This document shows, in pieces, positions 18,676-36,295 of a stretch of DNA of 64,000 nt (position 1 is its first letter; each line of letters opens with the position of its first letter). The notes below the pieces were generated by a model that did no database searches, was not told the DNA's origin, and was given only the letters and a program-made list of their open reading frames with translations. Origin of the DNA: Mytilus edulis (lineage: Eukaryota); the NCBI RefSeq assembly GCF_963676685.1, contig NC_092351.1, positions 59,768,001 to 59,832,000 of the forward strand, given 5' to 3'. Made by a program: the position numbers and the translations under genes.

Positions 18676-19462
18676 ATGAAGTATTATTTGATTGGAGTTA
18701 CAACCCTTTTGGGCCTCGTGTGCGGGGACGCCGAAGATATAGGAACGGTGATCGGTGTCGACCTCGGAACTACTTATTCTTGGTGAGTAAAAATCATTTT
18801 AATAGTATAAAGGGATGACATTATATGTTTTCGTCATTCACTGAAACATTTGTGAAAGTATGTTCTTTGGTTCATAAAAAGTAATATATAATGTCTTATA
18901 TTTTTTTTAATTGTCCTGTACCAAGTCAGAAAAATGGCCATTGTTACTTCTATTATTATAGTTCGTTTCTGTGTGTGTTACATTTTAGTGTTGTGTTTCT
19001 GTTGTGTCATAGTTCTCCTCTTATATTTGATGTGTTTCCCTCAGTGTTTGTAACCCGAATTTGTTTTTGTTTTACTCAATCGATTTATGAATTTCGAACT
19101 CGAACAGCTGTATACTACTGTTGCCTTTATCTATATAAATAAAAACATACTAGTATTAACTAAAACCAACAACTTTAATTTTCATTTCATCTTTTGAATG
19201 TTATTTTCTTCACTTTTTTTTATTTACATTTTCACAAAGACTTACTAATGTCTTTATCACTTTTTAGTGTCGGAGTGTATAAAAACGGAAGAGTTGAAAT
19301 CATTGCAAATGAGCAAGGGAACAGAATTACCCCTTCTTATGTAGCGTTTACAGAAGACGGAGAACGTCTAATAGGTGACGCCGCCAAAAACCAACTGACG
19401 TCTAATCCGGAAAATACGATATTTGACGTAAAACGTCTGATTGTCGGGAATGGGATGCACAA
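18676..19462 (+). pseudogene. HSPA5: BiP/GRP78 (ER HSP70) 5' part, coding exons 18676-18782 and 19268-~19462; frameshifted and interrupted by an insertion
   Basis: Signal peptide followed by [64 protein letters not shown] 1-bp deletion at ~19443 hides IGREWDAQ, and homology stops abruptly at 19462. Confidence 0.9.
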
Positions 19463-19884
19463 GGATAATAGTTACGCTGAACGGTGCCCACTGGTCACCC
19501 TATAAATAGTACTCTTCTGTGTAGTAATATTGTAGTTCTAAAAATAGAAAACTAAAAATAGACAATTCTTCTTTCTATTTAGCAATACACCATAGATCTA
19601 GAACCTGTCACCGTCTGTATTATCTGTAAGTAAAATTAACATACCGAGCAATTGAATACAACGAGTAACACAAACTTAAGTTTAATTAAGTCATTCAAAG
19701 CAAAATATTCGTTTCATCTATTTTGTATGATTTGTCATTTGTGGTGACACGTTCTTTTAAATGTTCGAATCACAGACTAGAAGGAAATCTTCTTTTTTGA
19801 ATTTTGAATATTGAATTTGATTACATGTGGCCATCTTAAACAGAAATGGGATTTGTTAACCTCTGTTGGACTTTATATGCTAGA

Positions 19885-22800
19885 ATGGGGTAACTTCTGG
19901 TCACCTTATTCATATACTGGATTTGGTGACCTCTGGTCACCTTATGTAAATATTGGATTTGGTGACCTCTGGTCACCTTATGTTAATAATAGATTTGGTG
20001 ACCTCTGGTCACCTTATGTTATTATTGGATTTGGTTACCTCTGGTCACCTGATGGAGATTTCAGATTTGGTCATCTCTGGTAATTAACATCAACCTCTGT
20101 TGGACTTTATATGCTAGAATGGGGTAACTTCTGGTCACCTTATTCATATACTGGATTTGGTGACCTCTGGTCACCTTATGTAAATATTGGATTTGGTGAC
20201 CTCTGGTCACCTTATGTTAATATTAGATTTGGTGACCTCTGGTCACCTTATGTTATTATTGGATTTGGTTACCTCTGGTCACCTGATGCAGATTTCAGAT
20301 TTGGTCATCTCTGGTAATTAACATTTACATACAACTAGTTGATGTTTTTCATATCATTTGTAGAAAGTTTGAGACAATCAAAGGAAGAGAAAAAAGAAGA
20401 AGAACAGGTTTGATATACATTATGGGTTCAACAAGAATATAGAACATTATTACATTAAGTTTAATATATCGATAAAACTTTACACAATGAACATTATCTT
20501 TCACGATCATCTACAAACAAATCTAAGAAAAATCCTTGATCTTTCAAATATTGCCAAGAGCATGGACAGTTGATAATTTAGTCAATATTTCTACTTATCC
20601 TCATCAGATACTTTTGGATAAATAAAATTGAATTTATTAATACAATTATCAAATGTTTATCTTCTTTTTTCAGAAGTCCTCAGAAAATGTAGATGAGAGT
20701 GGTATGTATCCATTTTATTTATTGTATGAAACCTTTGATATGATGGAAACATACACTATGTTTATATAATGCTGCAACTATTTTCTTTTTGAACTGAATA
20801 CTTGCAATCGTTTCTAGTAAAATGGCCACTTAGGCTTGATTGAACAAATCATTTTTTGTTTCTTGATTACCTTACACAAATATTTAATTTGATTACATGT
20901 GGTCACCTTAACCAGAAATGGGATTTGATAACCTCTGGTGGCCTTAACATGCTAGAATGGGGTAACTTCTGGTCACCTTATTCATATATTGGATTTGGTG
21001 ACCTCTGGTCACCTTTTGTGAATATTGGATTTGGTGACCTCTGGTAATATTAGATTAAGTTACCTCTGGTCACCTTATTCATATATTAGATTTGGTGACC
21101 TCTGGTCCCCTTATGTTAATATTGGATTTGGTTATCTCTGGTCACCTTATGTTTATATCGGATTTGGTTATCTCTGGTCACCTTACGTTTAAATTGGATT
21201 TGGTTACCTCTGGTCACTTTATGTTAATATAAAATTTGGTGACCTCTGGTCACCTTATGTTAATATTGGATTTGGTTACCTCTGGTCACCTGATGCAGAT
21301 TTCAGATTTGGTTATCTCTGGTTATTAACATTTACATACAACTAGTTGATGTTTTTCATATCATTTGTAGAAAGTTGAGACAATGAAAGAAAAAGAAAAA
21401 AGAAGAAGAACAGGTTTGATATACATTATGGGTTCAACAAGAATATAGAATATTATTACATTAAGTTTGATATACCGATAAAACTTTAAACAATGAACAT
21501 TATCTTTCATGATCATCTACAAACAAATCTAAGAAAAATACTTGATCTTTCAAACATTGCCAAGAGCATTGACAGTTGATGATTAAGTAAAATAATACTG
21601 ATCCTCATAAGATACTTTTGGATAAATAAAATTGAATTTACTAATACAATTATCATATATTTATCTTATTTTTTTAGAAGTTTTCAGAAAATGTAGATGA
21701 GAGTGGTATGTATGCATTTAATTTATTGTGTCAAACCTTTAATATTATTGAAACATACATTATGTTTATATAATGCTGCAACTATTATTCTTTTTGAACT
21801 TAAAATGGCCACTTAGGCTTGATTGAACATATCATTTTTTGTTTCTTGATTACCTTACATAAATATTTAATTTGATTACATGTGGTCATCTTAATCAGAA
21901 ATGGGATTTGTTAACCTCTGGTGGCCTTAACATGCTAGAATGGGGTAACTTCTTGTCACCTTATTCATATATTGGATTTGATGACCTCTGGTCACCTTAT
22001 GTAAATATTGGATTTGTTGACCTCTGGTCACTTTATGTTAATATTAGATTTGGTGACCTCTGGCCACCTTATGTTAATATTGGATTTGGTTACCTCTGGT
22101 TACCTTATGCTGATTTCAGATTTGGTTACCTCTGGTCATCAAAACATAAGTCATGTTATGTTTTTTATCATTTGTAGGAAATGTAAGACAATCGAAGAGA
22201 GGAAAAAAAGAACAAGAACAGGTTTGATATGCATAACTGGTTCAGCAAGACTATAGAATTTTATTACATATTACATTTAAAATATTAATAGCACTCAACA
22301 GAATGAACATTGTCTATCCTGATCTTTTAAAAAACGAATCTTAGAAAATCATTGACCTTGCAAACATTGCCAAGAGCATTGACAGTTGATAATTTAGATA
22401 ATTTTTATTTATTAGTACTCAGAAAATGTAGATGAAAGTAGTATGTATGCATTTAATTTGTTATATATTATTCTTATATATGATGGATAAGTACATCAAG
22501 TGTGTATGATACTGAAACTATTATTCTATTTGAACTTAAAACTTGTTATCGATAGCTGTAAAATGGCTACATCGGTTTGATTGAAAAGTTCATTTTTTTT
22601 TTTGGTATATTTAATTGGCTACATGTGGTCAACTTTACCAGATATGGTATTTGAGTACCCTTGGTTACCTAAAGCAGATATTGTATTTAGTTATCTTTGG
22701 TCATTTTCTGTTGTTATTTGAATTCTCGTGGCACCTTTTGCAGATTTCGGATTTTGTTATTCACTGGTCAATAAAATTTACAAAAATTGGTCATATGTAA

Positions 22801-24835
22801 TCTTAGATGTATGATTGTTTTATTGGTTGTTGTTGGCTTTGAACTAGTGAGTACTCTCAGATCTGTACAAATGGTCTTTTTGTTGTTGGGATGTATAAGT
22901 GCCGAGCCACTTTCACTCTTTTTTGTTAGATGTTTTTCTATTTGCATCCAGGGACCTATATTAACTGTTAATATAGGCCCCTGTTGTATCCATCTTTTGA
23001 GTTAAACCTTTTCCAACTGATTTTTATAGTTCGTTCTTATGTTGTACTATTACACCACTGTCCCAGGTTAGGGAAGGGTTGGGATCCCACTAACATGTTT
23101 AACCTGACACATTATGTATGTATGTGCCTGTCCCAAGTCAGGATCCTGCAATTCAATGGTTGTCGCTTGCTGCTGTATTACATATTTGTTTTTCGTTCAT
23201 TTATATGGACATCAATTAGTCCGTTAGTTTTCTCATTGGCAATTACACCACAATTTCTTTTTTAAATGTTGAGTTTTTTTTATCATTTGTAGAAGATGTA
23301 AGAAATTTGAAGAGGGTGAAAAAAGAAGAACAGGTTTGTATATATCATTGGTTCAGCAAAAACAGAATACTATAACATTACATTTACTATATTAGTAACA
23401 CTGAACAGAAAGAATGAACATTATCTTCCATGATCATTTAAAAATAAATCTTAGTAAATAATTGAAATTGCTTACGTTGTCAAGAGCATTTACAATCGAA
23501 ATTAAGTCAATTTATACGTATCTTCATTAGGATAAATCAGTTGATTTCCTATACGATTATTTAATATTTAACTTCTTTTTTCAAAAAGAAGTCAAAAGAA
23601 AATGTAGATGAAAGTGGTAGGTATTCATTTTATCATTTTTTTTTTAAATATGATGGAAAGGTTCATTAAGTCTATAAGATACTGAAACTAAATTTCCATT
23701 TAAACTTAAAACTTGTTATCGATAGCTTTAAAATCGCTACTTAGGTTTGATTGAAAAAAAATCTTTTTCTTCATATATCTGGTCACCTTATGCAGATATT
23801 GGATTTGAGGACCTCTGGTCACCTTATGAAGATATTAAATTTGGTTATCTCTGGTCACCTTATGCAGATATTGGATTTTGGGGACCTCTGGTCACCTTAT
23901 GAAGATACTGGATTTTGTTAAATCTGGTCACCTTATGCAGATATTGGAATTGGGGACCTCTGGTCACCTTATGAAGATATTGGATTTGGTTAAATCTGGT
24001 CATCTTATGCAGATATTGGATTTTGGAACCTCTGGTCACCTTATGCAGATATTGGATTTGGGGACCTCTGGTCACCTTATGCAGATATTCGATTTGGGGA
24101 CCTTTGGTGACCCTATGAAGAAATTGGATTTGTTATATATCTTGTCACCTTATGCAGATACTGGATTTGAGGACCTCTGGTCACCTTATGAAGATATTAA
24201 ATTTGGTTACCTCTGGTCACCTTATGCTGATATTGGATTTGGTTATATTTGGTCACCTTATGCAGATATTAAATTTGGGGACCTCTGGTCACCTTATGCA
24301 GATATTGAATTTGGGGACCTCTGGTCACCTTATGAAGATATTTGATTTGGGGACCTCTGGTCACCTTATGCAGATATTGAATTTGGGAACCTCTTGTCAC
24401 CTTATGCAGATATTTGATTTGTGGACCTCTGGTCACCCTATGAGGAAATTGGATTTGTTAAATATCTGGTCATCTTATGTAGATATTTGATATGAGGACC
24501 TCTGGTCACCAAATGCAGCTATTGGATTTGGGGACCTGTGGTCACGATATGCAGATATTGGATTTGGGGACCTCTGATCACCTTATGCAGATATTGAATT
24601 TGGGGACCGCTGGTCAGCCTATGAAGAAATTGGATTTGTTAAATATCTGGTCACCTTATGCATATATTGGATTTGAGGACCTCTGGTCACCTTATGAAGA
24701 TATTAAATTTGGTTACCTCTGGTCACCTTATGCAGATATTGGATTTGGTTATATCTGGTCACCTTATGCAGATATTGGATTTGGTTACCTCTGGTCACCT
24801 TATGCAGATTTCGAATTTGGTTACCTCTGGTCATC
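19885..24835 (+). repeat. 30-bp minisatellite arrays (consensus GGATTTGGTGACCTCTGGTCACCTTATGYWRATATT) within ~0.8-1.6 kb higher-order units
   Basis: Arrays at ~19885-20320, 20950-21320, 21935-22140, 22620-22780 (degenerate) and 23778-24835; palindromic core GGTGACC-TCT-GGTCACC. Confidence 0.95.
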
Positions 24836-26884
24836 AAAACATAAGTCATGTTATGTTTTTTATCATTTGTAGGAAATGTAAGACAATCGAAGAGAAGGAA
24901 AAAAGGACAAGAACAGGTTTGATATGCATTACTGGTTCAGCAAGACTATAGAATTTTATTGTATATTAGTGAATACACTTGATTCTCAAAGAAAACAGTT
25001 TATGCTGGTTTAAACACATAAATTGATGATCGGGTTTTTTTTTAAAAGCATTCATAGAGTAGTAGGTAAGGAATGGTAAATGGGTCGAAAGGAACAATCA
25101 AACTGAAATTTGGAGAACAATCTGACAAAGCTGGGCAAAAAAAAAAAAAAAAAACCCCACCAAAAACCAGGGTGGTCTCAGGTTATCTAGAATGGTTAGC
25201 AGATCCAGCTCATTATGTGGTGCCCATAATATTGTTCATGCTTGAGTTTAGGATCCCTTGGTATATTACTGTATCATTAGAAATCATATGTCTACTGTGA
25301 ATCATATACATGTGGCTTTGCCAATCTGTAAGACATTTTTTTAAGTTGTAAGAACTTTCATAACGGTGCTTAATATGTCTTATTACATATATTTATTAGC
25401 TTAACTGCAGGAAAAATCACAACTGTATCTCACTTCATTTTCAGGTGATGTTGACTATCAAGTACAATCCTTAAATACTTTAACCGAGGATCTTGTCGAT
25501 AACGAAGCAACCAAAAAGGCAGTATGCCGAAAAATGAAAGGGACAGCTGCCCAAAAAAAGGGTGACACTGAAAAAGCTAAGTAAGTGTTTGAGGGGAATT
25601 CAATTATTCAGATTTTATGAACATTGGATCTATAATGGCTACAAAAGCAATCGCCTTCTTGACATCTTTATTACATACTAAGAGTATGGAATAAAATACA
25701 CAATAGAAAATACAAACATTTAGATTAACATGAAATATATAAAACATACATTTTCCAAATACCATGATCATTATGTATTCATCTTCTAAACAATGAATTA
25801 TGAACTGAGTATTCTCATCTATTCAATTAATTGCTTATCTGTTTCAATAATTATTCTAGACTAAATTTGTAACAAAATTCAGATCATAAATTCATAATCA
25901 AGTCTATAATGCAATCTATCTTTTTGCACTCGAGGTCTACAAATGTATAATTATATAGAATATGAATAAATGGGTTAACTGCGAATGGAAATGTGTAGTT
26001 ATCATTTTAATATACAGAGAAATGATACATCATAAGTAATTGAAAAAAAAACATGATTCAAACACAAACATACTTCCAGCTGTTCAAAAATAGATTTTGT
26101 TTGAATATAACTATATGGACACGGAGAATATGTCAAAGAGACAACAACCTGACCGAAACGTAAAAAACCAACTCAAGGTTGTGCAAGTTTCATATTTCTC
26201 TGTGTACTAAATAATAAACTTATCAAAGCAAACTGACATGCAATCAATCATTTTAAAATTATTAGCATCGTTGGAATACTGACTATAAAATCATATACAA
26301 TCTACTTCTTACTGGTCATAAACTTGAAACAATCCACACTACATTTTTATCGGAAAGCTAGGTAGAACAATTGACTTATAATTATTGATGTACAAATTAC
26401 TTTTTAATTTGGCCTTACAATTCGACTTTGTCCTATGTTTTATTGTTGATATGCATAACATTGCTTTTCTCATTTATTTTTCAACGGTTTAACATGCTCT
26501 ATTTTATTGTAGCTAGGAAACATTTAAAATTATTGAATACAATTTTTGTTATTAATGACATAAATTAAGCATTATAGTACCAACATATTAAAACATTTTA
26601 AAAAGAATATTTAAGTCAATAAAATAAAATGCATTCTTGTAAAGTCTTTTCTTTGTTTAGATTAAATGATTCTTATTAAAACTAGAAGAATTAAAACGGT
26701 GTCATTATATAAAATTATGTAGGTAAAGAAATGTCCTGTAATAATAAAATTGCTGTCTTAAATTATTTTTGCAGAGAAATTATTGGCCATGTTCTAGGCG
26801 AACTAAATAAAACAAATGTTAACAAGGCAATGCATGGGAAAGATTTTGAGGCCTTTTGGAAGACAACAGAGACAATGCTGCCAG
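20364..26884 (+). pseudogene. Putative MULE accessory gene made of repeated micro-exons: A 20364-20407, 21371-21413, 22178-22221, 23293-23333, 24873-24916; B 20674-20701, 21678-21705, 22416-22440, 23589-23616; then 25411-25580 and 26775-26884
   Basis: Each segment is bounded by a pyrimidine tract + AG and a GT, and the phases chain 1-0, 0-1, 0-2, 2-1. It encodes charged repeats such as ESLRQSKEEKKEEEQKSSENVDES. Copy A2 is disrupted, and neither start nor end was found. Confidence 0.65.
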
Positions 26885-29800
26885 GTAATGATTTATTAGA
26901 CACATCACACGTATTATCTTAACTTAAAACATATTTGATCATTTGCTTAAAAAATATAACCTACTTGAGACAGCAAACAGACCTAGACCAATGTAATAAT
27001 TAGCCAATGTATCTGCTTGACAAAATCTTCAGTAGGAATAAGTATTTGTTGTATCAAATTATATACATTTGGAAACATCAGTATCTTTGCAAAACATTTC
27101 AAGAGCAAACTGTATATGTCCTACTTTTAAAGCCTTTAGGCACCAATGTAACATATAAAATTTTTGAATGAATATCAAGAAAAAGCAGTTTTTCAAAATC
27201 AGTATAATATTTCATTATTTTTTTCATTGAAATGGTTTACGAATGGATCCTTTCTTTCTGTGGGTAGATTTGAAACTGCCATCCACATTAACTGTACTCC
27301 CCCGTTTTTTTTTCAGAACACACTTTCGGCTAACTGAATAGTCATGATCAGTTTTTGAACTTTTGGATTTTCTGATTGGAAACAGCGGTTGTTGCTTTCG
27401 CTTTCTTGTTGTTTTGGAAAAGTTGATTGTCTTACAAATATATAATGCCGTTGTGAGTGCTTGTAAAATAGTTTTCTTTTTTTTCACGTCAATTGTCTGA
27501 AAATTTTTATTGTTTACATATATATTGATTTCCTCAATTTTTCTTTTAATAGCCTGGTCGGTTGTTTCTTTGTCTTCCTTTAATTGTTGTCTTGTTTCAT
27601 CAATTGAAGTAGACTCTATGTCAGGTGATGGAACTACCATTTTTGCCACCATCACACAAACACAATGTATACCATGGCTATTGGCAAAACATGTACATTT
27701 GAATGAGGTCAAATTAACAACTGGACAAAACCTCTACCTGGTTGTTATCTCTGTCATAAAAATATTGTTCTGCATTAAATACATTCATTGCTTCTGATCT
27801 GCGCTCTACAGTGGGGTCGATGTTCCTTTTAGAAGCAATCAAATCAGCTAAATGAACATGCTTACACATTCCTAAAAAATAGTAGAGAATGGAACATAAA
27901 TAAATGCATTGTACCCTTATGGTTTACTTTCAATTGTACAAACTTTAAACAAAACCACCAATCAACATGCAGTAAAGATTTACTTAAATTGGATCGCATC
28001 GTTTTAGACAAGTTGATGAGGCAAATGATTATTTGCACTTGTATAACCTGATGACGGTTGATAACGTCTTGTTGGAAGACAACAAAACCGAGGAGACTCA
28101 TAAAACCAAAAGACATTTACAACAACAGTAAAAAAACAATAATAAACAACACGAACTCCACTATAAACCTGAAGTAAAATTAGGTGCCCAAGAAGGGTAA
28201 GCATTTCCGCGACGATTTACGGCACCCGAAATTAATTATCTTGATTTCAACAATTCATACTTGATGGTGTACTTTTAAACATTGTTGAACTGACTTAAGA
28301 TAATAAAAAAAAACTTACCTCTTGTTGTTGCAGCTGGACAGTTGCACACTACATTGACAATGTCCACATTATAAATCGTCCCAAATGCTGTCTGTGATGG
28401 AACAGTGCATACTGTGGAAGAAGTCCATTGCACAGTTTGGTCGAGTCCTGCCTTGAGCATATTCTCTGCTGTCAATTTACTTTTGTCTTCCCTTTGTCCT
28501 CCCATATTTTTCAGGCGACCAATATTTTCGAGTTCATCTAGATAGCTAAAATTACGATGTTTTTTATTTATTTTTGATTATGAAAACATAATTCAAAGAT
28601 CTATTAATAAATTATTTCTTCAAAAATTGAATTTACAGTATTTAATACTCAATGTATTTGCATCTTAAATTGAAATGATCCTTCTAATTTCAGACGATTC
28701 AAGTGAACGATAAGAAGAACAGGATTGTGACAAATTTAAACTTACTTACTCATAAAACATAGTTACATTTCCATGGAGCAGAATAAGTAAGTCCTCTACT
28801 CTGCTATTGGCATACCCACCAAGGAAATGGTATTTCATGCCCAGGAAAAACCTGAAAACGACAAAATGTTAATGACTTTGAATTTATGATTTATGTTTGA
28901 ATGTACAAATAGAAAGTACATAAAATTATAATGTGTATACATTTGAATGTTATAAGTAGCATTATATTTTTTCTTTTAAAGTTCTCATACACATCAGGTT
29001 TTGCTAGACTACATTTTTCATTTTGTCTGCTTTTATGTAATTATCGACTTGCATTGACGATTATGATATTTGTATTAAATTTGCATAACCCTATCATGAA
29101 AGAACGGCAATAATCTCTCCGTATAGTTAAAAAATGTATAGTTTATATCATTTTAAGTCTTTGGTTACCCACGAAGAAGTAGGATTTAGCCAAAGTGTTT
29201 ATCCACAAAATAAAATATAGTTAGTTACTATTATCAAACAGATAATAATTAGATGATGCTTAAAATTTCGATCTAGTAATATATAAGGTGTATAGTAATA
29301 CAATGCATTAATAACCTTTCAACTAAGTTATTTGTATCTTAATCTTCATAAAAAAATGTCTTCCATAGTTGGCCCATCGACATCCCCACTTGTCAGTACA
29401 CCAGTTGTCTAACAAGTAGTCTGTTATTTGTTTGGAATGCATCTTCTCTTGCAACATTTGAACTTGTTGAGACAAGTCTTCTTTCTGATGAAAAATTATA
29501 TTGACACATTTTTTTTGAGTATAGAAACAGAATTTATAGATTAAACACGCATGCATGTACTCATAAGCATTGTACATTTATAGGTAAGATCTTTAAATCG
29601 CATTAAGCAACTCTTTGTACTTTCTAAATTATTTTACTGATATAATTCAATAGAGATTCATTGCTATATGTTTTACTGTTTTTTTTTGTTTTTTTTTTTT
29701 TTTATCTTTTATCAACCAAAATTCATTGATTGTAATTTTTTATTATTATTATTGCGTTTTAATTCACTCATTATGAAAAATCTTGTTGATATGATTTATC

Positions 29801-31629
29801 ATCTTTTGATATTTAAACAATTACAATATTGGAAAAAGAGAAAAAGATCCCACTAATGTCTCATTTCTACAGGGATTTTTCTTATAATATTAACATATCA
29901 ATAACCAATCGTGTTTCATTGTGAGGCAACAAATTCGTGATTTATTTTTAAAAACAATGTTTCACATCCTCTGCATATAAGACTGTTGTAAAAAAAATAT
30001 CAGATTCAGGTCCAGTTATACTATGTAAATTAACATTCACCTAGTACATATTTAATATTCGAATACATTATTTGAATTTGTCAGGACCAACTCAAAATTA
30101 TTGACCAATTTAAAAATTATTCTATTTCACTGTGGTATCATAGGTTCATTATATTTTATTTGTCTTAACTAGCACGTTTGATTACCCTGGTATATATTTT
30201 CATAGTTCTGATATAGTCAATAACTTTTTTTTTGGTTTGTGCGTGCATGGGTCCTGATACACCAGATTCTTTTTTATTCAAAAATATGTACACAGCCTGT
30301 AAACCAAATCATTTATATTTAGTTCATGTCTTAAAGATTTCTTGCTAATAATAATTTAATATTGTCTTGAATATATCATGACTAATTATTTTTCAACAAG
30401 ATAATATTTGATCTATGAGTATTAATGCGAAAGAGTTGATTTATTAAATCAAAACTGACCCCAGGCTTATAAACAAAAACAAGATATAAAATGTTAAATC
30501 CAATGCAATTAATACCTATTGATTCAATAGAGTGAAATTTCACAGAATAACTCTCATTTAATAACTGATTTTTTTCCCATAAAGGTAAAATGTATGATAC
30601 ATATATTGAATGATATAATACCTGTAAAACATGAAACCAGCAAAGTAAAACGGAGCTGTTTGGGAATACTTCATTAATTGCGCTGATTTCTTTGGTACCA
30701 TAAAAGATCTAGTAAACAAAATGTAACACTGCAGTATCAACAATTTGTATCTTTATCTCATATTGGTTTTATTCTATAATACTATTTGTTAATTTGTAAA
30801 TAATTATGTAAATTCTTATTTTTTTATATCAATTAGATTCTCAATTTTTGATTGAAAAGTTTGGAAACAAGCCCAACAAAGCTTTAATTATTATGTTATA
30901 TGTAAACCTGACTATGAATTAATCTTACATGCTTTGGTTTTATGGCCTTCCATAGATCACTCTCAAAAGTTTTTAAGGAAATTGATGTTTTTGTAAGTTT
31001 CATTAGTCCATGAGATAAATATTATTATGCAAAATTATTTATCTAATATTCTTTGCCAAAATTCAACTTAAATTGTTGTTGACCTTAATTGTATTAATTT
31101 TGATATGCAGGAAAAAATGTTTCTTTAGATGAATCTTTCATTGCATTGTCTATTGGTCAATTGTCAAATAACTATCACTGCAAGAATATGTGAATAATGT
31201 CATAGTTTAACCTGTAATTTTTACAGACAAATTAATTAAAAGATATAATTGAATGGCTTTTATTTATCTTTTATATCCATATCAGATTTGATGTTGACTC
31301 CGAATATTGTAACTAATTGTAAACAAATAATAAGACGAAAATGAAAAGTGTTAATAAGCAATGTTATTATACTTCAAGAGTTTTTTTCCTATATAAAATA
31401 CATGAAATAGTTGTGCTATTTCCTTCTAAAGACAATTTGCCAGTTAATAGTTTCAAAGACTATTTACCCGGTGAATAGTTTTGTAAGTAGATTTCCCGAA
31501 CTTTTCTAACTTTCTTTTCATTGGTCAAAAATGACGTCATTTATCATTCGCGATTCTCTGAGTTTTTCCCATAGTCATGTAAAACACTGAAATATCGAAA
31601 ACAGGAAGACGACATCAGACGATCAAAAC

Positions 31630-33551
31630 ATGGCAGAAACAAGCAGATTTGCATCTTTAGAACCTGATGATCTTAGTAAAATATTGAATGACAGAGATTC
31701 GAAAAATACTAAAAACGTAATAGGAGTATCAAAAAGGATAATAGGAGATTATTTGCTAGAAAAAGACGGTTTATATAAAACTATACAAGACTTAGACCAG
31801 GCCAACACAGAAGACGTCGTCAAAACACTCCGACAATTTTATGTTGAGGTCAGAAAAACAGATGGTACATTATATGCTAAAAAATCTTTGATTACATTAA
31901 GATTTGGCTTACAAAAACATTTCGCTGAAACAAGAAAACAAGACATAATCAACAATGAAGAGTATAAAGCTGCAAATGATATGTTCAAAGCTATGATGGT
32001 GGCGATGAAAAAAGAAGGGAAGGCCAATGTCAATCACAAAGAGCCTATTTGTCCTGAAGACTTACAGAAATTATATAAACATGAACAATTTTCCCTTAAG
32101 ACTCCCGAGGCATTACAGAAGAGAGTGTTTTTTGAGTATTTGTATTACTTCTGTAATAGAGGCAGAGAGAATATAAGAGATGTACAAAGGGACGATTTCG
32201 AGTTAAAAAGAGATGCAAAAGGGCTGCGGTATGTCAGAGTTAAAGTTGTACGGCAAACCAAAAATCATAGAGGGGATGACTTTACAGATGTTGATGATAA
32301 AGACGGCAGGATGTATGAAATTCCAGGTAAATTATTTGTTGTTATAAATGTAATAGATAAATAGATTAAATACATGATGCTGAAACCATGTTTAAGAAGT
32401 TTACGTTGAATACATTCTATAATGAGTTTTGCACATATGAAGTTCACATACGCGTCGCCAGTAAAACTGCATTTGCGACCGTTAAATTGGCAATTGACAG
32501 TGACACAACTACAGTACTGTTATTCCTTAATTTTACCATTGTTCACTTGACTCACTGATGAGACACATTATTTACAAGCACATGTACATGTATCTTTTTC
32601 AATGAGTTACACCAGTTGACCAGAGGTCAATCAACTTAACTAACATCCTCAAACATTGGTTTTTACTATGATTAATAATGTAACGTACATCAGCATTGTG
32701 AGATAGGAAATTATGGGAAATTGTAAGTTGTTTATTTCTTAAAACTGTAATTAAAAAAAATCAAAACTCTCTCAAAAATTGCAGGAACAATGTATAAAAA
32801 ATCTTATAAACACACCAAAAAAAGAATTTTTCTGGTAAACTTCAATTATGTATTAAAAGTGTCTATCCTTTTTTTTTCAGGAAGTGCTAATTGCCCTGTT
32901 ATATCTTTCACCAAATATTTTAGTAAGCTGCATCCAGACAGGACAGAGTTTTGGCAGCGTCCAAAGCGTGCATCCAAAACTACAGAATCCGCCGATATAT
33001 GGTATGACAATAGTCCAGTAGGAAAAAATACTCTTGGAAATCTAATGGCTAAAATAAGCGAAGAGTGTGATTTGTCTCGTAGGTACACAAATCATTGCAT
33101 ACGCAGTACATGCATAACTGTCTTGGACGAAGGGGGTATTGAAACTCGACACATTATGGGACTTAGCGGCCACAAGTCGGAATCAGCAGTAAAGTCCTAC
33201 TGCAAGCGTCTGAGCAGTACTAAAAAACATGAAATGTCAAACATTCTAAGTGAAACTATTCAAAGTGCAACAAGTTTAAATGGTGAATTATCAGAAAAGA
33301 GAGTTAAAACTCAGGATACAACAACATCAATATGTGATAATAGCGTTGACTTACTTTCTAATGATATTGAATTTGATCAAATACTACAGGACATTTCAAG
33401 CTATGAGTCAAATCAGACAAACATTCAAAATATTATTCCTCCTTCATGTAGTTCAACAGTAGGTGTCAATAATAACTTCCGTTTCCCATTGTCTGGGTTT
33501 TCAATTCAAAACATTAACAATTCCAATATACATTTTCATTTTGAGAAGTGA
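31630..33551 (+). CDS. Crypton tyrosine recombinase (DUF3504/KCTD1-like), 2 exons 31630-32326 and 32881-33551, 455 aa
   Basis: NRGRE (R), QTKNH (K), CPV, TNHCIRST (HxxR), SGHKS (H) and VKSY (Y); phase-1 GT-AG intron; no stops. Confidence 0.9.
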
Positions 33552-33851
33552 GTAAATTCAGTTAGTCAGTAACTTTAGTGAGTCAATTAATGTTATTATT
33601 CGATATGTTTCTTGTTATATTTTGTTGAAAATACAGTCATTATTAAATCATACAATGCTGTTTACTATTTTATTTAAGATACCATATGAATCAGGAAACT
33701 AAATTGGTAAATATTGTCATGAATGGTCCTGGAATACTACTGTGGTTGTACTTGTACAATGTGCAAATAGTATGGTATAGATCTTCTAATTTACATTTGA
33801 CAGAAGGTGTTTGAAGATTTCTTTGAAAGTTGTGTTGTTCAGTATAATAAA

Positions 33852-33995
33852 ACACCTAATGACTGGGTGTGCGGGTAATAGCAAGTTTGTTGTCCCTTCG
33901 CATACCAACTATTGCCCTCGGCTTCGCCTCGAGCAATAGTTGGTATCTCAGGGACAACAAACTTGCTATTACCCTCACACCCAGTCAATAGGTGT
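33852..33995. repeat. ~68-bp-arm subterminal inverted repeat (hairpin with GGCTTCGCC loop) at the Crypton 3' end
   Basis: ACACCTAATGACTGGGTGTG...CACACCCAGTCAATAGGTGT; the arms are nearly complementary. Confidence 0.9.
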
Positions 33996-36086
33996 ATACT
34001 ATTGAATTCGAAATATTGTCAACTTTGATACCCACAAACCTTGGACAGAAATCAAATCCCTGATTTTCAGCCGTAGTCTTCAGATATCTCAGAAATATTT
34101 TGACAACTTCACCAGTATCATCTGACAAGATACAGTACGAAAGAGGAGTGCCCCGGCCTTGCTGTTCATCTCTTGCAACAAGAGCATAGAATGAATAACC
34201 ATAGGCAGTTAATCCTTAAACAAACAAAAAAATATGCTGTAAGTTTATTGTCACACAGTTCATTTTTTTTTACACGTGTTAATATTGTAAATTGAAATTT
34301 CCATGATTATATATAAGTATAATTATACCTTTATATGTAGCATCTAAAAACACCACATTTTCTGCTAGTTTCATCATTCTCTTTCTTTGTGCTTCATTCT
34401 GGTAAATGATTTCTAATGGATGTACTCCCCTACAATGTAAATGTTACATATTTAATGTCCAGAAGTATGAGTATATATTTTATGTTGAAATCATGTGCAT
34501 TTAATGAAAGAGAAGACGACAAACTAGCTACATTGTACTCATATTAAATAACCTCAATGAAAACTGAAAAGACAAAAATGTAAAATCTATTGACAAAATA
34601 TATGACTTGTGAACAAGTGTAGCACTAAAAACACTCAAAAGGATAAAAACCAAAAATACAAAGCATCTATTATAAGAAGTCAGATATACTACAGAAAACT
34701 CCTCTGTACAGCTCTCATTGAAACATTTTACGGACAAAATCATATACGAAATTGGACAGACGAGTACTATAAAAAAAATTCATTTGAACATAAGGCAATC
34801 CAGTCATGTCTGAAGAACAAAACTGGGTATCAATCAGTAATTTCAGAATTACTCTTTATCAGCATTATGCTTATATCAGTCATTAAAATTTACAAAAGTA
34901 CATTATTATATAAGAATAATTACTCTTTCAATTCTTGGTAGAAAATTATCTTTTCCTTCAGTATGTGTGTGCATAACTCGTGTACAGCTACAGCATCATT
35001 CTGGTGAATTCTAAAACAAATGAGGAAATATAAAATTTAACCAACTTTTGTAGAAATATCATAGATCAATACAAGTACTGACATGTACAGAACCAATGTC
35101 AACAGTACATCTGTATAATTTGACCAGAAAACACCAAAGTTCATTTACTGTGTAAAGTGCATAATTACAATCAGATTGGTAAAAAGATTAAATGGTGAAT
35201 AAAGGTCTAAATATCTATATAAAGTAATGATTTAAACAGACGACCATTGGGTTTGCATACAGTGCATCAGTTTAAATGACCGCAAACCAAAGTCTGTATC
35301 TATGAATGTCATAGAGGTAACCAACGTCAATTCCAGTGTAAGGTACTAAATACCAAATGCTCTTTACATTTAACTTTACCAAAGTATGTAGATGTAACAA
35401 GATGGAACCAAGGATATACTTTGTGTGAAGCTATCAATATTTTTAAATTGTCCAGATGTGACCAAAGTTGCGGTGAACAGTGGTAACCAAAGTCAATATA
35501 TGTGTACGGTTTCAAAAGGAGTATAGATTATACACATATCTAAAATAGACATAGGAAACACAAGTATGTTTAAGGTAGCCCTAGTCAATATCTGTGTATC
35601 ATTATATATATGTTTAAGGTGACCAGAGTAAACAAATTGGTGAAAAGTGATTATCAAATTCTGCAAACATTTAAGGGTACAAGTGGCGACCCAGGTCCAT
35701 ATCTGTGTTAATTAACCAGAGGTTACCAAAATCTTTATATTTTAAGTGTTATCAGAGGTAGCAAAGTCTTTGTCTGTGTACTTCAATATAAAGATTTGGT
35801 TCAAGTAATCAGAGGTAACTTAAGTCCGGGCAATGGTTATTTTTTGATGACTGGATACGTAGAGACAAAGCCTGTTTCTTTGGATTTTTGACAAGAACAA
35901 AGTAGTAAGTACATATTTTAAGTAAATCTTTTGATTATGTTTTGATACCTTTTATCCATTTTGTAACGTTGACATATATTCTTAATGTCAACTGGTGTCA
36001 GATAGTATCTGCTATCGTGCACATCAAAATGCCTTTGAACTCTAGCCCATTTCCATGCTTTGCACAATATTTCCATTGGTTTTTTC

Positions 36087-36186
36087 NNNNNNNNNNNNNN
36101 NNNNNNNNNNNNNNNNNNNNNNNNNNNNNNNNNNNNNNNNNNNNNNNNNNNNNNNNNNNNNNNNNNNNNNNNNNNNNNNNNNNNNN
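36087..36186. other. Assembly gap (100 N, true size unknown)
   Basis: Run of exactly 100 N. Confidence 1.
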
Positions 36187-36295
36187 CCATGATTTGAAAG
36201 AACAGAAGAAAGCTTTAGAAGACATTGTTAATCCAATTATAAGTAATATATATCAAGATTCTCCTTCTTCGGAGGGAGAAAAAGAAGAATTGTAA
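36187..36295 (+). CDS. HSPA5: BiP/GRP78 C-terminal fragment ending in KEEL
   Basis: HDLKEQKKALEDIVNPIISNIYQ...GEKEEL* matches the BiP lid end and an ER-retention signal. Confidence 0.85.

What the first reader, a model, noticed from the sequence alone, without database searches (positions are those of the whole stretch)
20364..26884. Hidden micro-exon gene inside a MULE: a 24-codon exon pair amplified together with a minisatellite
Seen: five higher-order units (807-1580 bp), each with a 30-bp satellite block and a purine-rich exon A (44, 43, 44, 41, 44 nt); four also carry an exon B (28, 28, 25, 28 nt). All have AG/GT borders. A+B = 72 nt = 24 codons, and the length variants A4 (41) and B3 (25) differ by exactly 3 nt, preserving frame. 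The chain continues in phase into unique exons 25411-25580 and 26775-26884. The product is a Lys/Glu-rich repeat (ESLRQSKEEKKEEEQKSSENVDES, GNVRQSKRGKKEQEQ, QSKRRKK) followed by a unique domain. The ORF track misses this gene entirely. Inference: a transposon-encoded accessory protein whose disordered charged/NLS-like tract expands by exon-pair duplication. Copy A2 has a 1-bp deletion and a TGA, so this copy is dead or skips that unit.
Basis: partly seen in the sequence, partly recalled or inferred. Interest (0 to 1): 0.8.

Follow-up and report, generated by a model that had tools for sequence, protein, structure and literature searches.

The report
Spliced micro-exon repeats in mussel Mutator transposon
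The repeated 44- and 28-base segments are real, splice-competent micro-exons. They lie among the satellite repeats of a dead Mutator-type transposon of a mussel and feed into that transposon's conserved second gene, but it is not shown that they encode a selected Lys/Glu-rich protein tract.

Summary
Five higher-order units carry A segments of 44/43/44/41/44 nt, four carry B segments of 28/28/25/28 nt, and all have AG/GT borders. The satellite period is 36 bp, not 30.

The region is the left arm of a MULE with a 43-bp TIR starting at 19457, 9-bp TSDs in sister copies, and a MULE-domain transposase on the minus strand. This copy sits inside an HSP70/BiP-like exon and is dead.

Splicing is supported. 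One contig of a presumed RNA run joins a B exon to 25445-25580 and then to 26775 onward.

The downstream exons U1 and U2 belong to a small helical protein. It recurs, 40-60% identical and with the same intron phases, beside diverged MULE transposases at three other loci, so it is a true accessory gene.

Coding of the A/B tract is not supported family-wide:
- Only 12 of 26 A copies are intact.
- Length variants keep frame at the neutral rate (4 of 12).
- A TGA is shared by four copies.
- Exon bodies are no better conserved than introns, while splice signals are.
- The default spliced path has no in-frame AUG.

My best reading is an amplified leader or optional N-terminal cassette. This is a new variant of a known kind, of moderate interest.

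The parts
19448..19456 (.). Candidate left target-site duplication (GAATGGGAT) inside exon 2 of an HSP70/BiP-like gene
   Evidence: These are the 9 bases directly before the TIR. Sister copies have 9-bp TSDs. The right end of this copy is lost in the N gap, so the duplicate could not be checked.
19457..19499 (+). Left terminal inverted repeat (43 bp), ending in the motif CTGGTCACC
   Evidence: The same 43 bp begin 11 copies and occur inverted at the far end of four copies: C6, C8_78, C11_43 and C12.
19501..19508 (+). TATAAATA box directly inside the TIR; inferred promoter of the second gene
   Evidence: Read from the sequence and conserved in the copies. Promoter function was not tested.
19530..19625 (+). 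Inferred non-coding first exon E1 (donor ATCT|GTAAGT at 19626); the start is approximate
   Evidence: The donor is conserved in four aligned copies. The exon has no ATG, and an in-frame TAG lies at 19599-19601. No RNA evidence.
19795..19803 (+). Deletion scar: about 204 bp, including a first B-type exon (B0), are missing here relative to sister copies
   Evidence: Alignment with C2, C12 and C8_78.
19858..20324 (+). 36-bp minisatellite block S0
   Evidence: TRF.
20364..20407 (+). Micro-exon A1 (44 nt, type 1)
20674..20701 (+). Micro-exon B1 (28 nt)
20961..21322 (+). 36-bp minisatellite block S1
   Evidence: TRF.
21371..21413 (+). Micro-exon A2 (43 nt; 1-nt deletion and in-frame TGA)
   Evidence: The CAATGAAAG TGA is shared with units in C2, C11_10 and C1.
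21678..21705 (+). Micro-exon B2 (28 nt); the B-type exon that the spliced X1 contig lays on
21944..22138 (+). 36-bp minisatellite block S2
   Evidence: TRF.
22178..22221 (+). Micro-exon A3 (44 nt, type 3)
22416..22440 (+). Micro-exon B3 (25 nt; acceptor shifted by 3 nt)
22750..23260 (.). Unrelated high-copy repeat inserted in unit 3
   Evidence: Depth of 10^4 to 4x10^5 in the contig runs, with many loose ends.
23293..23333 (+). Micro-exon A4 (41 nt, type 4)
23589..23616 (+). Micro-exon B4 (28 nt)
23777..24833 (+). 36-bp minisatellite block S4 (29 copies)
   Evidence: TRF.
24873..24916 (+). Micro-exon A5 (44 nt, type 3)
25400..25580 (+). Accessory-gene exon U1. The long form starts at 25400 and is out of frame here because one G is lost at about 25416. 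The short form starts at 25445. The donor is AA|GTAAGT at 25581.
   Evidence: Spliced contig, copy alignment, public models P0010, P0005 and P0012, and paralogues with the same phases.
26775..26922 (+). Accessory-gene exon U2. It is internal up to the donor at 26885, or terminal with a stop at 26920-26922.
   Evidence: Spliced contig and an unspliced continuing contig. Hits P0001-P0006. P0012 ends ...MLPGNDLLDT.
27224..30743 (-). 3' and central exons of the convergent MULE transposase (SWIM-like CxC...CxH and MULE-domain exon). Broken in this copy.
   Evidence: ORFs. The sister-copy exon hits PF10551. There is a 10-bp deletion in the MULE-domain exon near 30700.

Best explanation
Window 19457-36086 is a dead copy of a large Mutator-like element (MULE) of a Mytilus genome, inserted into an HSP70/BiP-like exon. 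Like maize MuDR, it has two convergent genes: the transposase on the minus strand and a small accessory gene on the plus strand, apparently driven from just inside the left TIR.

In older relatives the accessory gene has three coding exons: a 79-codon exon 1, then U1, then U2. In this family exon 1 is gone. In its place stands a higher-order tandem repeat. Each unit combines a block of 36-bp minisatellite with two micro-exons, A (44 nt) and B (28 nt), which have strong, conserved splice signals and purine-rich bodies. The minisatellite repeats the inner TIR motif CTGGTCACC and probably forms arrays of transposase-binding sites.

Unequal recombination in the satellite amplifies and deletes whole units, so exon pairs are co-amplified passively. 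The exons are spliced into transcripts that run on into U1 and U2.

Shown:
- the element type;
- the unit anatomy;
- the conservation of the splice signals;
- one spliced B->U1->U2 molecule;
- the co-divergence of the accessory gene with the transposase.

Inferred:
- the TIR-proximal promoter and exon E1;
- the binding-site role of the satellite;
- that the A/B chain serves mainly as a repeated 5' leader or dispensable N-terminal extension, not as a selected Lys/Glu-rich domain.
For: MULE identity:
- 43-bp TIR and 9-bp TSDs in C8_78, C11_43 and C12.
- PF10551 at E=7.9e-6 on a sister-copy exon.

Satellite as TIR motif arrays:
- CTGGTCACC occurs 39 times on the plus strand between 19491 and 24791.
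- In full copies it lies on the plus strand in the left arm and the minus strand in the right arm.
- The A and B exons occur only in the left arm, on the plus strand.

Exon status:
- Between the three diverged unit types the acceptor (-12 to -1) is 100% invariant and the donors 75-83%. The 3' ends of both exons are nearly invariant. The intron interior is 49% invariant.
- Family-wide, AG is kept in 23 of 26 A copies and 29 of 31 B copies. GT is kept in 24 of 26 and 31 of 31.

Splicing:
- An X1 contig of 199 nt (depth 46.7) joins the B end to 25445, and 25580 to 26775.
- In raw RNA reads (X24), U1 and U2 have depth 7-10 against 0-2 in the introns.
- Public models P0005/P0009 (M. coruscus; two isoforms that differ by one A+B pair), P0013, P0014 and P0016 (M. 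trossulus RefSeq) contain the A/B peptides.

Accessory gene:
- Paralogues at C7:53.357M, C14:33.946M and C11:3.344M have the same exon phases and 41-60% identity.
- Each lies 8-24 kb upstream of a diverged MULE transposase exon on the opposite strand.

Leader rather than selected domain:
- 12 of 26 A copies are intact.
- 4 of 12 length variants keep frame, which is the neutral third.
- A TGA is shared by four copies.
- The A exon body is 65-73% identical between types, against 74-83% for the flanking intron.
- E1 has no ATG, and a TAG closes the frame 24 nt before its donor.
- The expressed X1 contig reads GAC TAA, a stop, right after the B->U1 joint.
Against: Several coincidences favour coding:
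- A+B is 72 nt.
- The only open frame through A+B is the one that stays in phase with U1, both by A->25400 (phase 0) and by B->25445 (phase 1, keeping the ancestral Gly codon).
- In-frame ATGs lie 22 and 25 nt upstream of the type-1 and type-3 acceptors. A RefSeq model of M. trossulus uses the first.
- Annotation pipelines call the tract CDS.

Other cautions:
- All genomic copies may be decaying relics, so broken frames are weak evidence about the active master.
- No A->B or B->A joint was seen directly in reads. Only 15 of 42 joints were listed, exons of 28-44 nt are hard to lay, and only 6-18% of the raw runs were read.
- X1 is only guessed to be RNA.
- The promoter and exon E1 are untested.
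Confidence: 0.55

Rival explanations
1. The A/B chain is translated, so the accessory protein of this MULE family carries an N-terminal Lys/Glu-rich, NLS-like disordered tract. Its length is set by the number of exon pairs and it is fused in frame to the U1-U2 domain.
For: The period is 72 nt, and the single open frame is in phase with U1 by two routes (and phase arithmetic on the sequence). M. coruscus models P0005/P0009 and the M. trossulus RefSeq model P0016 encode exactly this. B ends in phase 1 with G, like the lost ancestral exon 1. An ATG at the 3' end of B (ATGAGAGTG) gives the MRV start of P0005/P0009 when B joins B.
Against: The frame is not conserved across copies: 14 of 26 A copies are defective. 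A TGA is shared by four copies, so it probably stood in their common source. Changes between unit types show no third-position bias (read from the sequence). The exon bodies evolve faster than the introns. The default E1->B0->A1 path has no AUG. The one expressed spliced contig has a stop straight after B->U1. The M. galloprovincialis RefSeq model P0010 starts its CDS only at U1.
Confidence: 0.28
2. The A and B segments are not functional exons. They are cryptic splice sites in a repeated non-coding subterminal region that are used occasionally. The gene models are artefacts of predictors stringing together purine-rich open stretches.
For: Purine-rich sequence is poor in stop codons by composition. 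All units are duplicates, so AG/GT recurrence is inherited. Coverage of the A exons in the two raw RNA runs is near zero. Only one spliced contig was seen.
Against: Between old unit types, the acceptor and donor neighbourhoods are far better conserved than either the intron or the exon body. The A/B units occur only in the arm that is transcribed toward U1-U2, never in the inverted right arm. B joins U1 at the exact ancestral acceptor. Annotations of three other species agree on the same borders.
Confidence: 0.12
3. This is a Pack-MULE-type capture. U1-U2 would be a fragment of a host gene picked up by the transposon, and the A/B exons merely splice onto it to give a chimeric, functionless transcript.
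For: MULEs are known to capture host gene fragments (PMC6446971). This family holds only the last two of three ancestral coding exons.
Against: All three diverged paralogues found lie next to a comparably diverged MULE transposase in the same convergent layout. The gene therefore travels and diverges with the element, not with a host locus. No copy outside a transposon context was identified.
Confidence: 0.05

Closest known systems
MuDR of maize (mudrA / mudrB) and other two-gene MULEs (Hiun/VANDAL21 vanB-vanC, yeast Mutyl mutB)
   Same: It is a Mutator-superfamily element with a transposase plus a second, lineage-specific accessory gene. Here, as in MuDR, the two genes converge and the second starts next to a TIR (background from PMC6446971).
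   Different: It is in an animal (mussel). No similarity to MURB, VANB or MutB was tested or seen. The accessory protein is a small helical protein of about 168 aa with a weak TF_AP-2-like signal. Its 5' part has been replaced by tandemly amplified micro-exons.
Rehavkus and other foldback-type DNA transposons with subterminal tandem repeats (Tribolium Rehavkus, Drosophila Tetris)
   Same: It has short TIRs followed by variable arrays of tandem repeats in inverted orientation in both arms, and 9-bp TSDs (PMC6446971; bioRxiv 10.1101/2024.12.02.626372).
   Different: No PHD finger was found, and the zinc finger looks SWIM-like. The left array is broken into higher-order units that each carry two spliced micro-exons, which has not been described for those elements.
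Tandem exon duplication and exonised repeats in low-complexity protein tracts
   Same: A pair of exons whose summed length is a multiple of 3 is repeated in tandem. This could lengthen a charged low-complexity tract without breaking the frame.
   Different: The duplication unit here is set by a transposon's minisatellite, not by the gene. Across copies the frame is not maintained better than chance.

Membership tests
Mutator-like elements (MULE superfamily) | Terminal inverted repeats | tested here: met
   A 43-bp TIR, GCACAAGG...CTGGTCACC, stands at the left end of 11 copies and inverted at the right end of four.
Mutator-like elements (MULE superfamily) | Target-site duplication of 8-11 bp | tested here: met
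   9-bp TSDs were found in C8_78 (AGTTCATGC), C11_43 (ATACCATCG) and C12 (AAACCGACA). The window copy could not be tested because its right end lies in the N gap.
Mutator-like elements (MULE superfamily) | DDE transposase with the MULE domain (PF10551) | tested here: inconclusive
   A single exon of sister copy C12 scores E=7.9e-6 and 26.7 bits, against a cut-off of 27.6, on profile positions 66-98 of 99. Motifs such as FLDATYK and DRD...CWFH were seen by eye. The exons were not joined. The window's own exon has a 10-bp deletion.
Rehavkus group | Minisatellite next to the TIR | tested here: met
   36-bp arrays stand in both arms of the full copies.
Rehavkus group | PHD finger in the transposase | tested here: inconclusive
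   There was no PHD hit in the exon-wise Pfam scans. A SWIM-like CxC...CxH motif split by an intron was seen by eye. The 5' exons were not scanned.
MuDR-type two-gene MULE | Second gene convergent with the transposase and carried by the element through its divergence | tested here: met
   At three diverged loci the accessory-gene paralogue lies on the plus strand and the MULE transposase exon on the minus strand, 8-24 kb apart.
MuDR-type two-gene MULE | Homology of the second protein to MURB | not tested
   No MURB sequence was available from a tool. The Pfam scans of U1, U2 and P0012 gave no such family.
TF_AP-2 (PF03299) domain proteins | Score over the Pfam gathering cut-off | tested here: not met
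   P0004 scores 22.0 bits against 23.4 (E=1.7e-4). A paralogue's exon 1 gives E=0.06. P0012 and two other exon-1 copies give no hit. The genome-wide PF03299 scan found only the canonical AP-2 genes.
TF_AP-2 (PF03299) domain proteins | Independent support from profile or fold comparison | tested here: inconclusive
   hhalign against a mussel AP-2 domain was negative, but the profile was shallow (Neff 1.4). The PDB profile search was negative. The AF2 model has pLDDT 50.5, so no fold search was run. BLASTP gives a colinear match at 18% identity and E=0.14. The language-model Atlas gives 0.94 for the whole protein and 0.88 for U1-U2 alone, and all top hits are AP-2 clusters.
Pack-MULE (host-fragment carrier) | Non-autonomous element carrying a fragment of a host gene that exists independently | tested here: not met
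   The family has its own transposase. Every paralogue of the carried gene that was found sits beside a MULE transposase.

The most novel reading that the evidence does not exclude
The second gene of this mussel MULE lineage may encode a very divergent TF_AP-2-type helical DNA-binding or dimerisation domain. In this family its N-terminal, basic half would have been swapped for a self-expanding array of Lys/Arg/Glu-rich micro-exon pairs embedded in the transposase-binding minisatellite. Cis sites and a trans-acting basic tract would then grow and shrink together. This would link an animal transcription-factor fold to a transposon accessory gene, and it would be a new way of building a modular protein.
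Probability: 0.15. Interest if true: 0.75.

Novelty: new variant of a known kind. Interest (0 to 1): 0.5.

Why it matters
Second genes of Mutator elements are well studied in plants but almost unknown in animals. This is a clear animal case. A small protein gene has stayed with its MULE transposase through about 50% sequence divergence, and in one family its front end has been rebuilt from the element's own subterminal satellite.

It shows how recombination in a transposon's binding-site arrays can mass-produce splice-competent micro-exons. These are raw material for new leaders or low-complexity protein tracts, and they are a trap for gene predictors, which already annotate the tracts as mussel proteins. 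The weak AP-2-like signal, if real, would bear on where that animal transcription-factor domain came from.

Tried and rejected
- **Pfam on single exons.** Scans of U1, U2 and the window's transposase ORFs gave nothing usable.
- **Word search with U2.** It found only an unspliced 63-aa ORF from a Logan contig.
- **The AP-2 lead.**
  - The PDB sequence search and the PDB profile search were both negative.
  - hhalign was negative.
  - P0012 has no Pfam hit.
  - The AF2 model was too poor (pLDDT 50.5) to justify a fold search.
  - I keep it as a lead only.
- **Rehavkus membership.** Not adopted, because no PHD finger was seen.
- **The BiP exons at 18.7-19.4 kb as the start of the micro-exon gene.** Rejected, because the TIR at 19457 separates them, and the same TIR starts 10 other copies that have unrelated flanks.
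- **The right arm as a source of A/B units.** Rejected, because none were found on the minus strand.
- **The 25-nt gap in the spliced contig.** None of the six G000 copies I aligned has it, so its source copy is unknown.
- **Literature.** I found no paper on mussel MULE accessory genes or on AP-2-like domains in transposons.
- **Joined spliced model.** The exons were searched one by one, and public proteins stood in for the joined product.
Full report
**1. The observation**

- Five A segments stand at 20364, 21371, 22178, 23293 and 24873, with lengths 44, 43, 44, 41 and 44 nt. All lie between tcatttgtag and gtttg.
- Four B segments stand at 20674, 21678, 22416 and 23589, with lengths 28, 28, 25 and 28 nt. 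All are followed by gta(t/g)gt.
- Between the units lie blocks of a minisatellite. Tandem Repeats Finder gives it a period of 36 bp, not 30. Its unit contains the palindrome GGTGACC-TCT-GGTCACC.
- A2 has the 1-nt deletion and an in-frame TGA.

**2. What the region is**

The same sequence occurs at a dozen or more loci of this 1.37-Gb genome.
- All copies begin with the same 43 bases, GCACAAGG...CTGGTCACC, at window position 19457.
- Four copies carry these bases inverted at their far end.
- Three copies are flanked by perfect 9-bp duplications.
- On the minus strand lie the exons of a transposase. In sister copy C12 one exon matches the Pfam MULE domain (E=7.9e-6) and shows the usual FLDATYK and DRD...CWFH motifs.

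The element is therefore a Mutator-like element. The inner TIR motif CTGGTCACC is what the minisatellite repeats. It occurs 39 times on the plus strand between 19491 and 24791. In full-length copies it lies on the plus strand in the left arm and on the minus strand in the right arm. Subterminal tandem repeats of this kind are known from Rehavkus and other foldback-type transposons, where they are thought to strengthen transposase binding (PMC6446971; bioRxiv 10.1101/2024.12.02.626372).

The window copy is dead.
- It sits inside exon 2 of an HSP70/BiP-like gene (PF00012, E=1e-22).
- It has lost about 204 bp, including a first B exon.
- It has lost one G in the long form of U1.
- It has a 10-bp deletion in the MULE-domain exon.
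- It carries nested insertions and runs into the N gap at 36087.

**3. Are A and B exons?**

Three lines of evidence say yes.

(a) Conservation of the splice signals. The three old unit types in the window differ a great deal, yet the 12 nt before the A acceptor are 100% invariant. The donor neighbourhoods are 75-83% invariant and the 3' ends of both exons nearly invariant, against 49% for the intron interior. Across 26 A and 31 B copies of the family, AG is kept in 23 and 29, and GT in 24 and 31.

(b) The units are directional. They occur only in the left arm on the plus strand, pointing toward the downstream exons, and never in the inverted right arm.

(c) RNA-level evidence. When four runs were laid on 20950-26949, one contig of run X1 (199 nt, depth 46.7) joined the end of a B exon to 25445. 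It then ran 25481-25580 and joined 25580 to the exon that starts at 26775. X1 is only guessed to be RNA. Even if it were DNA, such a joined form would have to descend from a spliced RNA. In raw RNA reads of another mussel species (X24), U1 and U2 reach depth 7-10 against 0-2 in the introns. The A exons are almost uncovered there, and no A-B joint was among the 15 of 42 joints listed.

Public annotations agree on the borders.
- M. coruscus CAC5381448 and CAC5381449 read MRV-KSSENVDES-GNVRQSK...-LNCKKRSQLYPISFS-GDVDYQ...-EIIGHV..., and the two differ by exactly one A+B pair.
- M. trossulus XP (P0016) reads MFFISFE-ESLRQSKKERKEEEQ-KSSENVDES-GNVRQSK....

**4. What the downstream exons are**

The full-library search with U2 alone and follow-up searches found a complete 168-aa protein in M. 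californianus, P0012. Its sequence is MKTNK...ITARVQGPDRMSVHQIGDYL...SMLTN / GDVDYQVQSLNTL... / EIVGHVIAELNKTNVNKAMHGKVFEAFWKTIQTMLPGNDLLDT.

In the window's own genome, three much more diverged copies of this three-exon gene exist. They are 41-60% identical at the protein level and have identical intron phases. Each lies 8-24 kb upstream of an equally diverged MULE transposase exon on the opposite strand. That transposase exon has only ten matches in the whole genome, so the pairing is not chance. The gene is a real accessory gene of this MULE lineage, in a MuDR-like convergent layout. This agrees with note s1-839006. The window's family lacks the 79-codon exon 1, and the satellite/A/B array stands in its place.

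**5. Is the A/B tract a selected coding sequence?**

For coding:
- A+B is 72 nt.
- Only one frame is open, and it is in phase with U1 by both routes: A->25400 and B->25445. The second route keeps the ancestral phase-1 Gly codon.
- In-frame ATGs lie just upstream of the type-1 and type-3 acceptors.

Against coding:
- Only 12 of 26 A copies are intact.
- Of 12 A length variants, only 4 keep the frame, exactly the neutral third.
- Six A copies carry stops. One TGA (CAATGAAAG) is shared by the second unit of four copies, so it probably stood in their common source.
- The A exon bodies are less conserved between types (65-73%) than the flanking intron (74-83%).
- Differences between types show no third-position bias.
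- The inferred first exon has no ATG and closes the frame with TAG.
- U1 and U2 in sister copies carry indels of -8, -4, +1, +4 and +/-1 nt.
- The expressed X1 contig reads GAC TAA immediately after the B->U1 joint.
- The M. galloprovincialis RefSeq model starts its CDS only at U1.

I therefore rate a repeated leader or dispensable N-terminal cassette, amplified passively with the satellite, above a selected Lys/Glu-rich NLS-like domain. The second is not excluded.

**6. Identity of the accessory protein**

- Pfam gives a sub-threshold TF_AP-2 hit for one member (E=1.7e-4, 22.0 against 23.4 bits) and a weaker one for a paralogue's exon 1.
- BLASTP against a mussel AP-2 domain is colinear but weak (E=0.14).
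- The language-model Atlas returns only AP-2 clusters, at 0.94 for the whole protein and 0.88 for U1-U2 alone.
- P0012 has no Pfam hit. The profile searches against the PDB and hhalign are negative. The AF2 model is all-helical but unreliable (pLDDT 50.5).

This is a lead, not a finding.

**7. Limits**

The exons were searched one at a time, and public proteins served as the joined product.

**8. Verdict**

The anatomy is real and more than chance. The protein-coding and NLS part is unproven and, on the family data, doubtful. It is a new variant of known kinds, namely two-gene MULEs and transposons with subterminal satellites. Its products are already present as uncharacterised models in public mussel annotations.

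Noticed in passing
window 18676-19456 and 36188-36295: An HSP70/BiP-like gene is split by the transposon. There is a signal-peptide exon (MKYYLIGV...) and then exon 2 (PF00012, E=1e-22), which runs to the insertion site with one base missing in ...KRLI(G)REWD. A C-terminus ending ...GEKEEL* follows directly after the 100-N gap. About 540 codons are unaccounted for, so this is a pseudogene, an assembly gap or a misjoin.
   Followed up: partly
P0004/P0012; window 25445-25580 and 26775-26884; L048: The MULE accessory protein gives repeated weak signals for the animal transcription-factor AP-2 domain, PF03299. These come from sub-threshold Pfam hits, a colinear BLASTP match and language-model neighbours. 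The profile and PDB searches are negative.
   Followed up: partly
window 22178-22221, 23293-23333, 24873-24916 and all B exons: Every ATG inside the type-3 and type-4 A exons is followed at once by a stop (ATG-TAA). So is the first ATG of each B exon (ATG-TAG). The second ATG of B (ATGAGAGTG) ends exactly at the exon border. In-frame ATGs also lie 22 and 25 nt upstream of the type-1 and type-3 acceptors. A spliced leader would therefore carry many minimal upstream ORFs.
   Followed up: no
window 22750-23260 and 25950-26349: Two stretches are covered at depths of 10^3 to 4x10^5 in the contig runs, with many loose ends. They are very abundant short repeats (SINE-like) nested in the element.
   Followed up: no
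window 21642 / 23773: Run X21 (raw RNA reads, another mussel species) shows 55 reads joining 21642 to 23773 on opposite strands. This is an inverted junction, presumably from a rearranged family copy in that species.
   Followed up: no
G000:C8:78527670-78531679 (locus L034/L044, copy C8_78): A 2.75-kb non-autonomous derivative with both TIRs and a perfect 9-bp TSD. It keeps the first exon, B0, one A/B unit and satellite, but has neither transposase nor U1-U2.
   Followed up: partly
G000:C11:44086000-44100000 (copy C11_44): A sister locus that still has the ancestral exon 1, with a stop in it, upstream of U1 and U2. It has no satellite or A/B units within 2.6 kb. It corresponds to the M. edulis model CAG2190970, whose exons match at 92-98%, which suggests that the window's genome is M. 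edulis or very close to it.
   Followed up: partly
window 30690-30710 (minus strand): The window's transposase has a 10-bp deletion that removes the ...VDRD... codons of the MULE-domain exon, relative to copy C12.
   Followed up: yes
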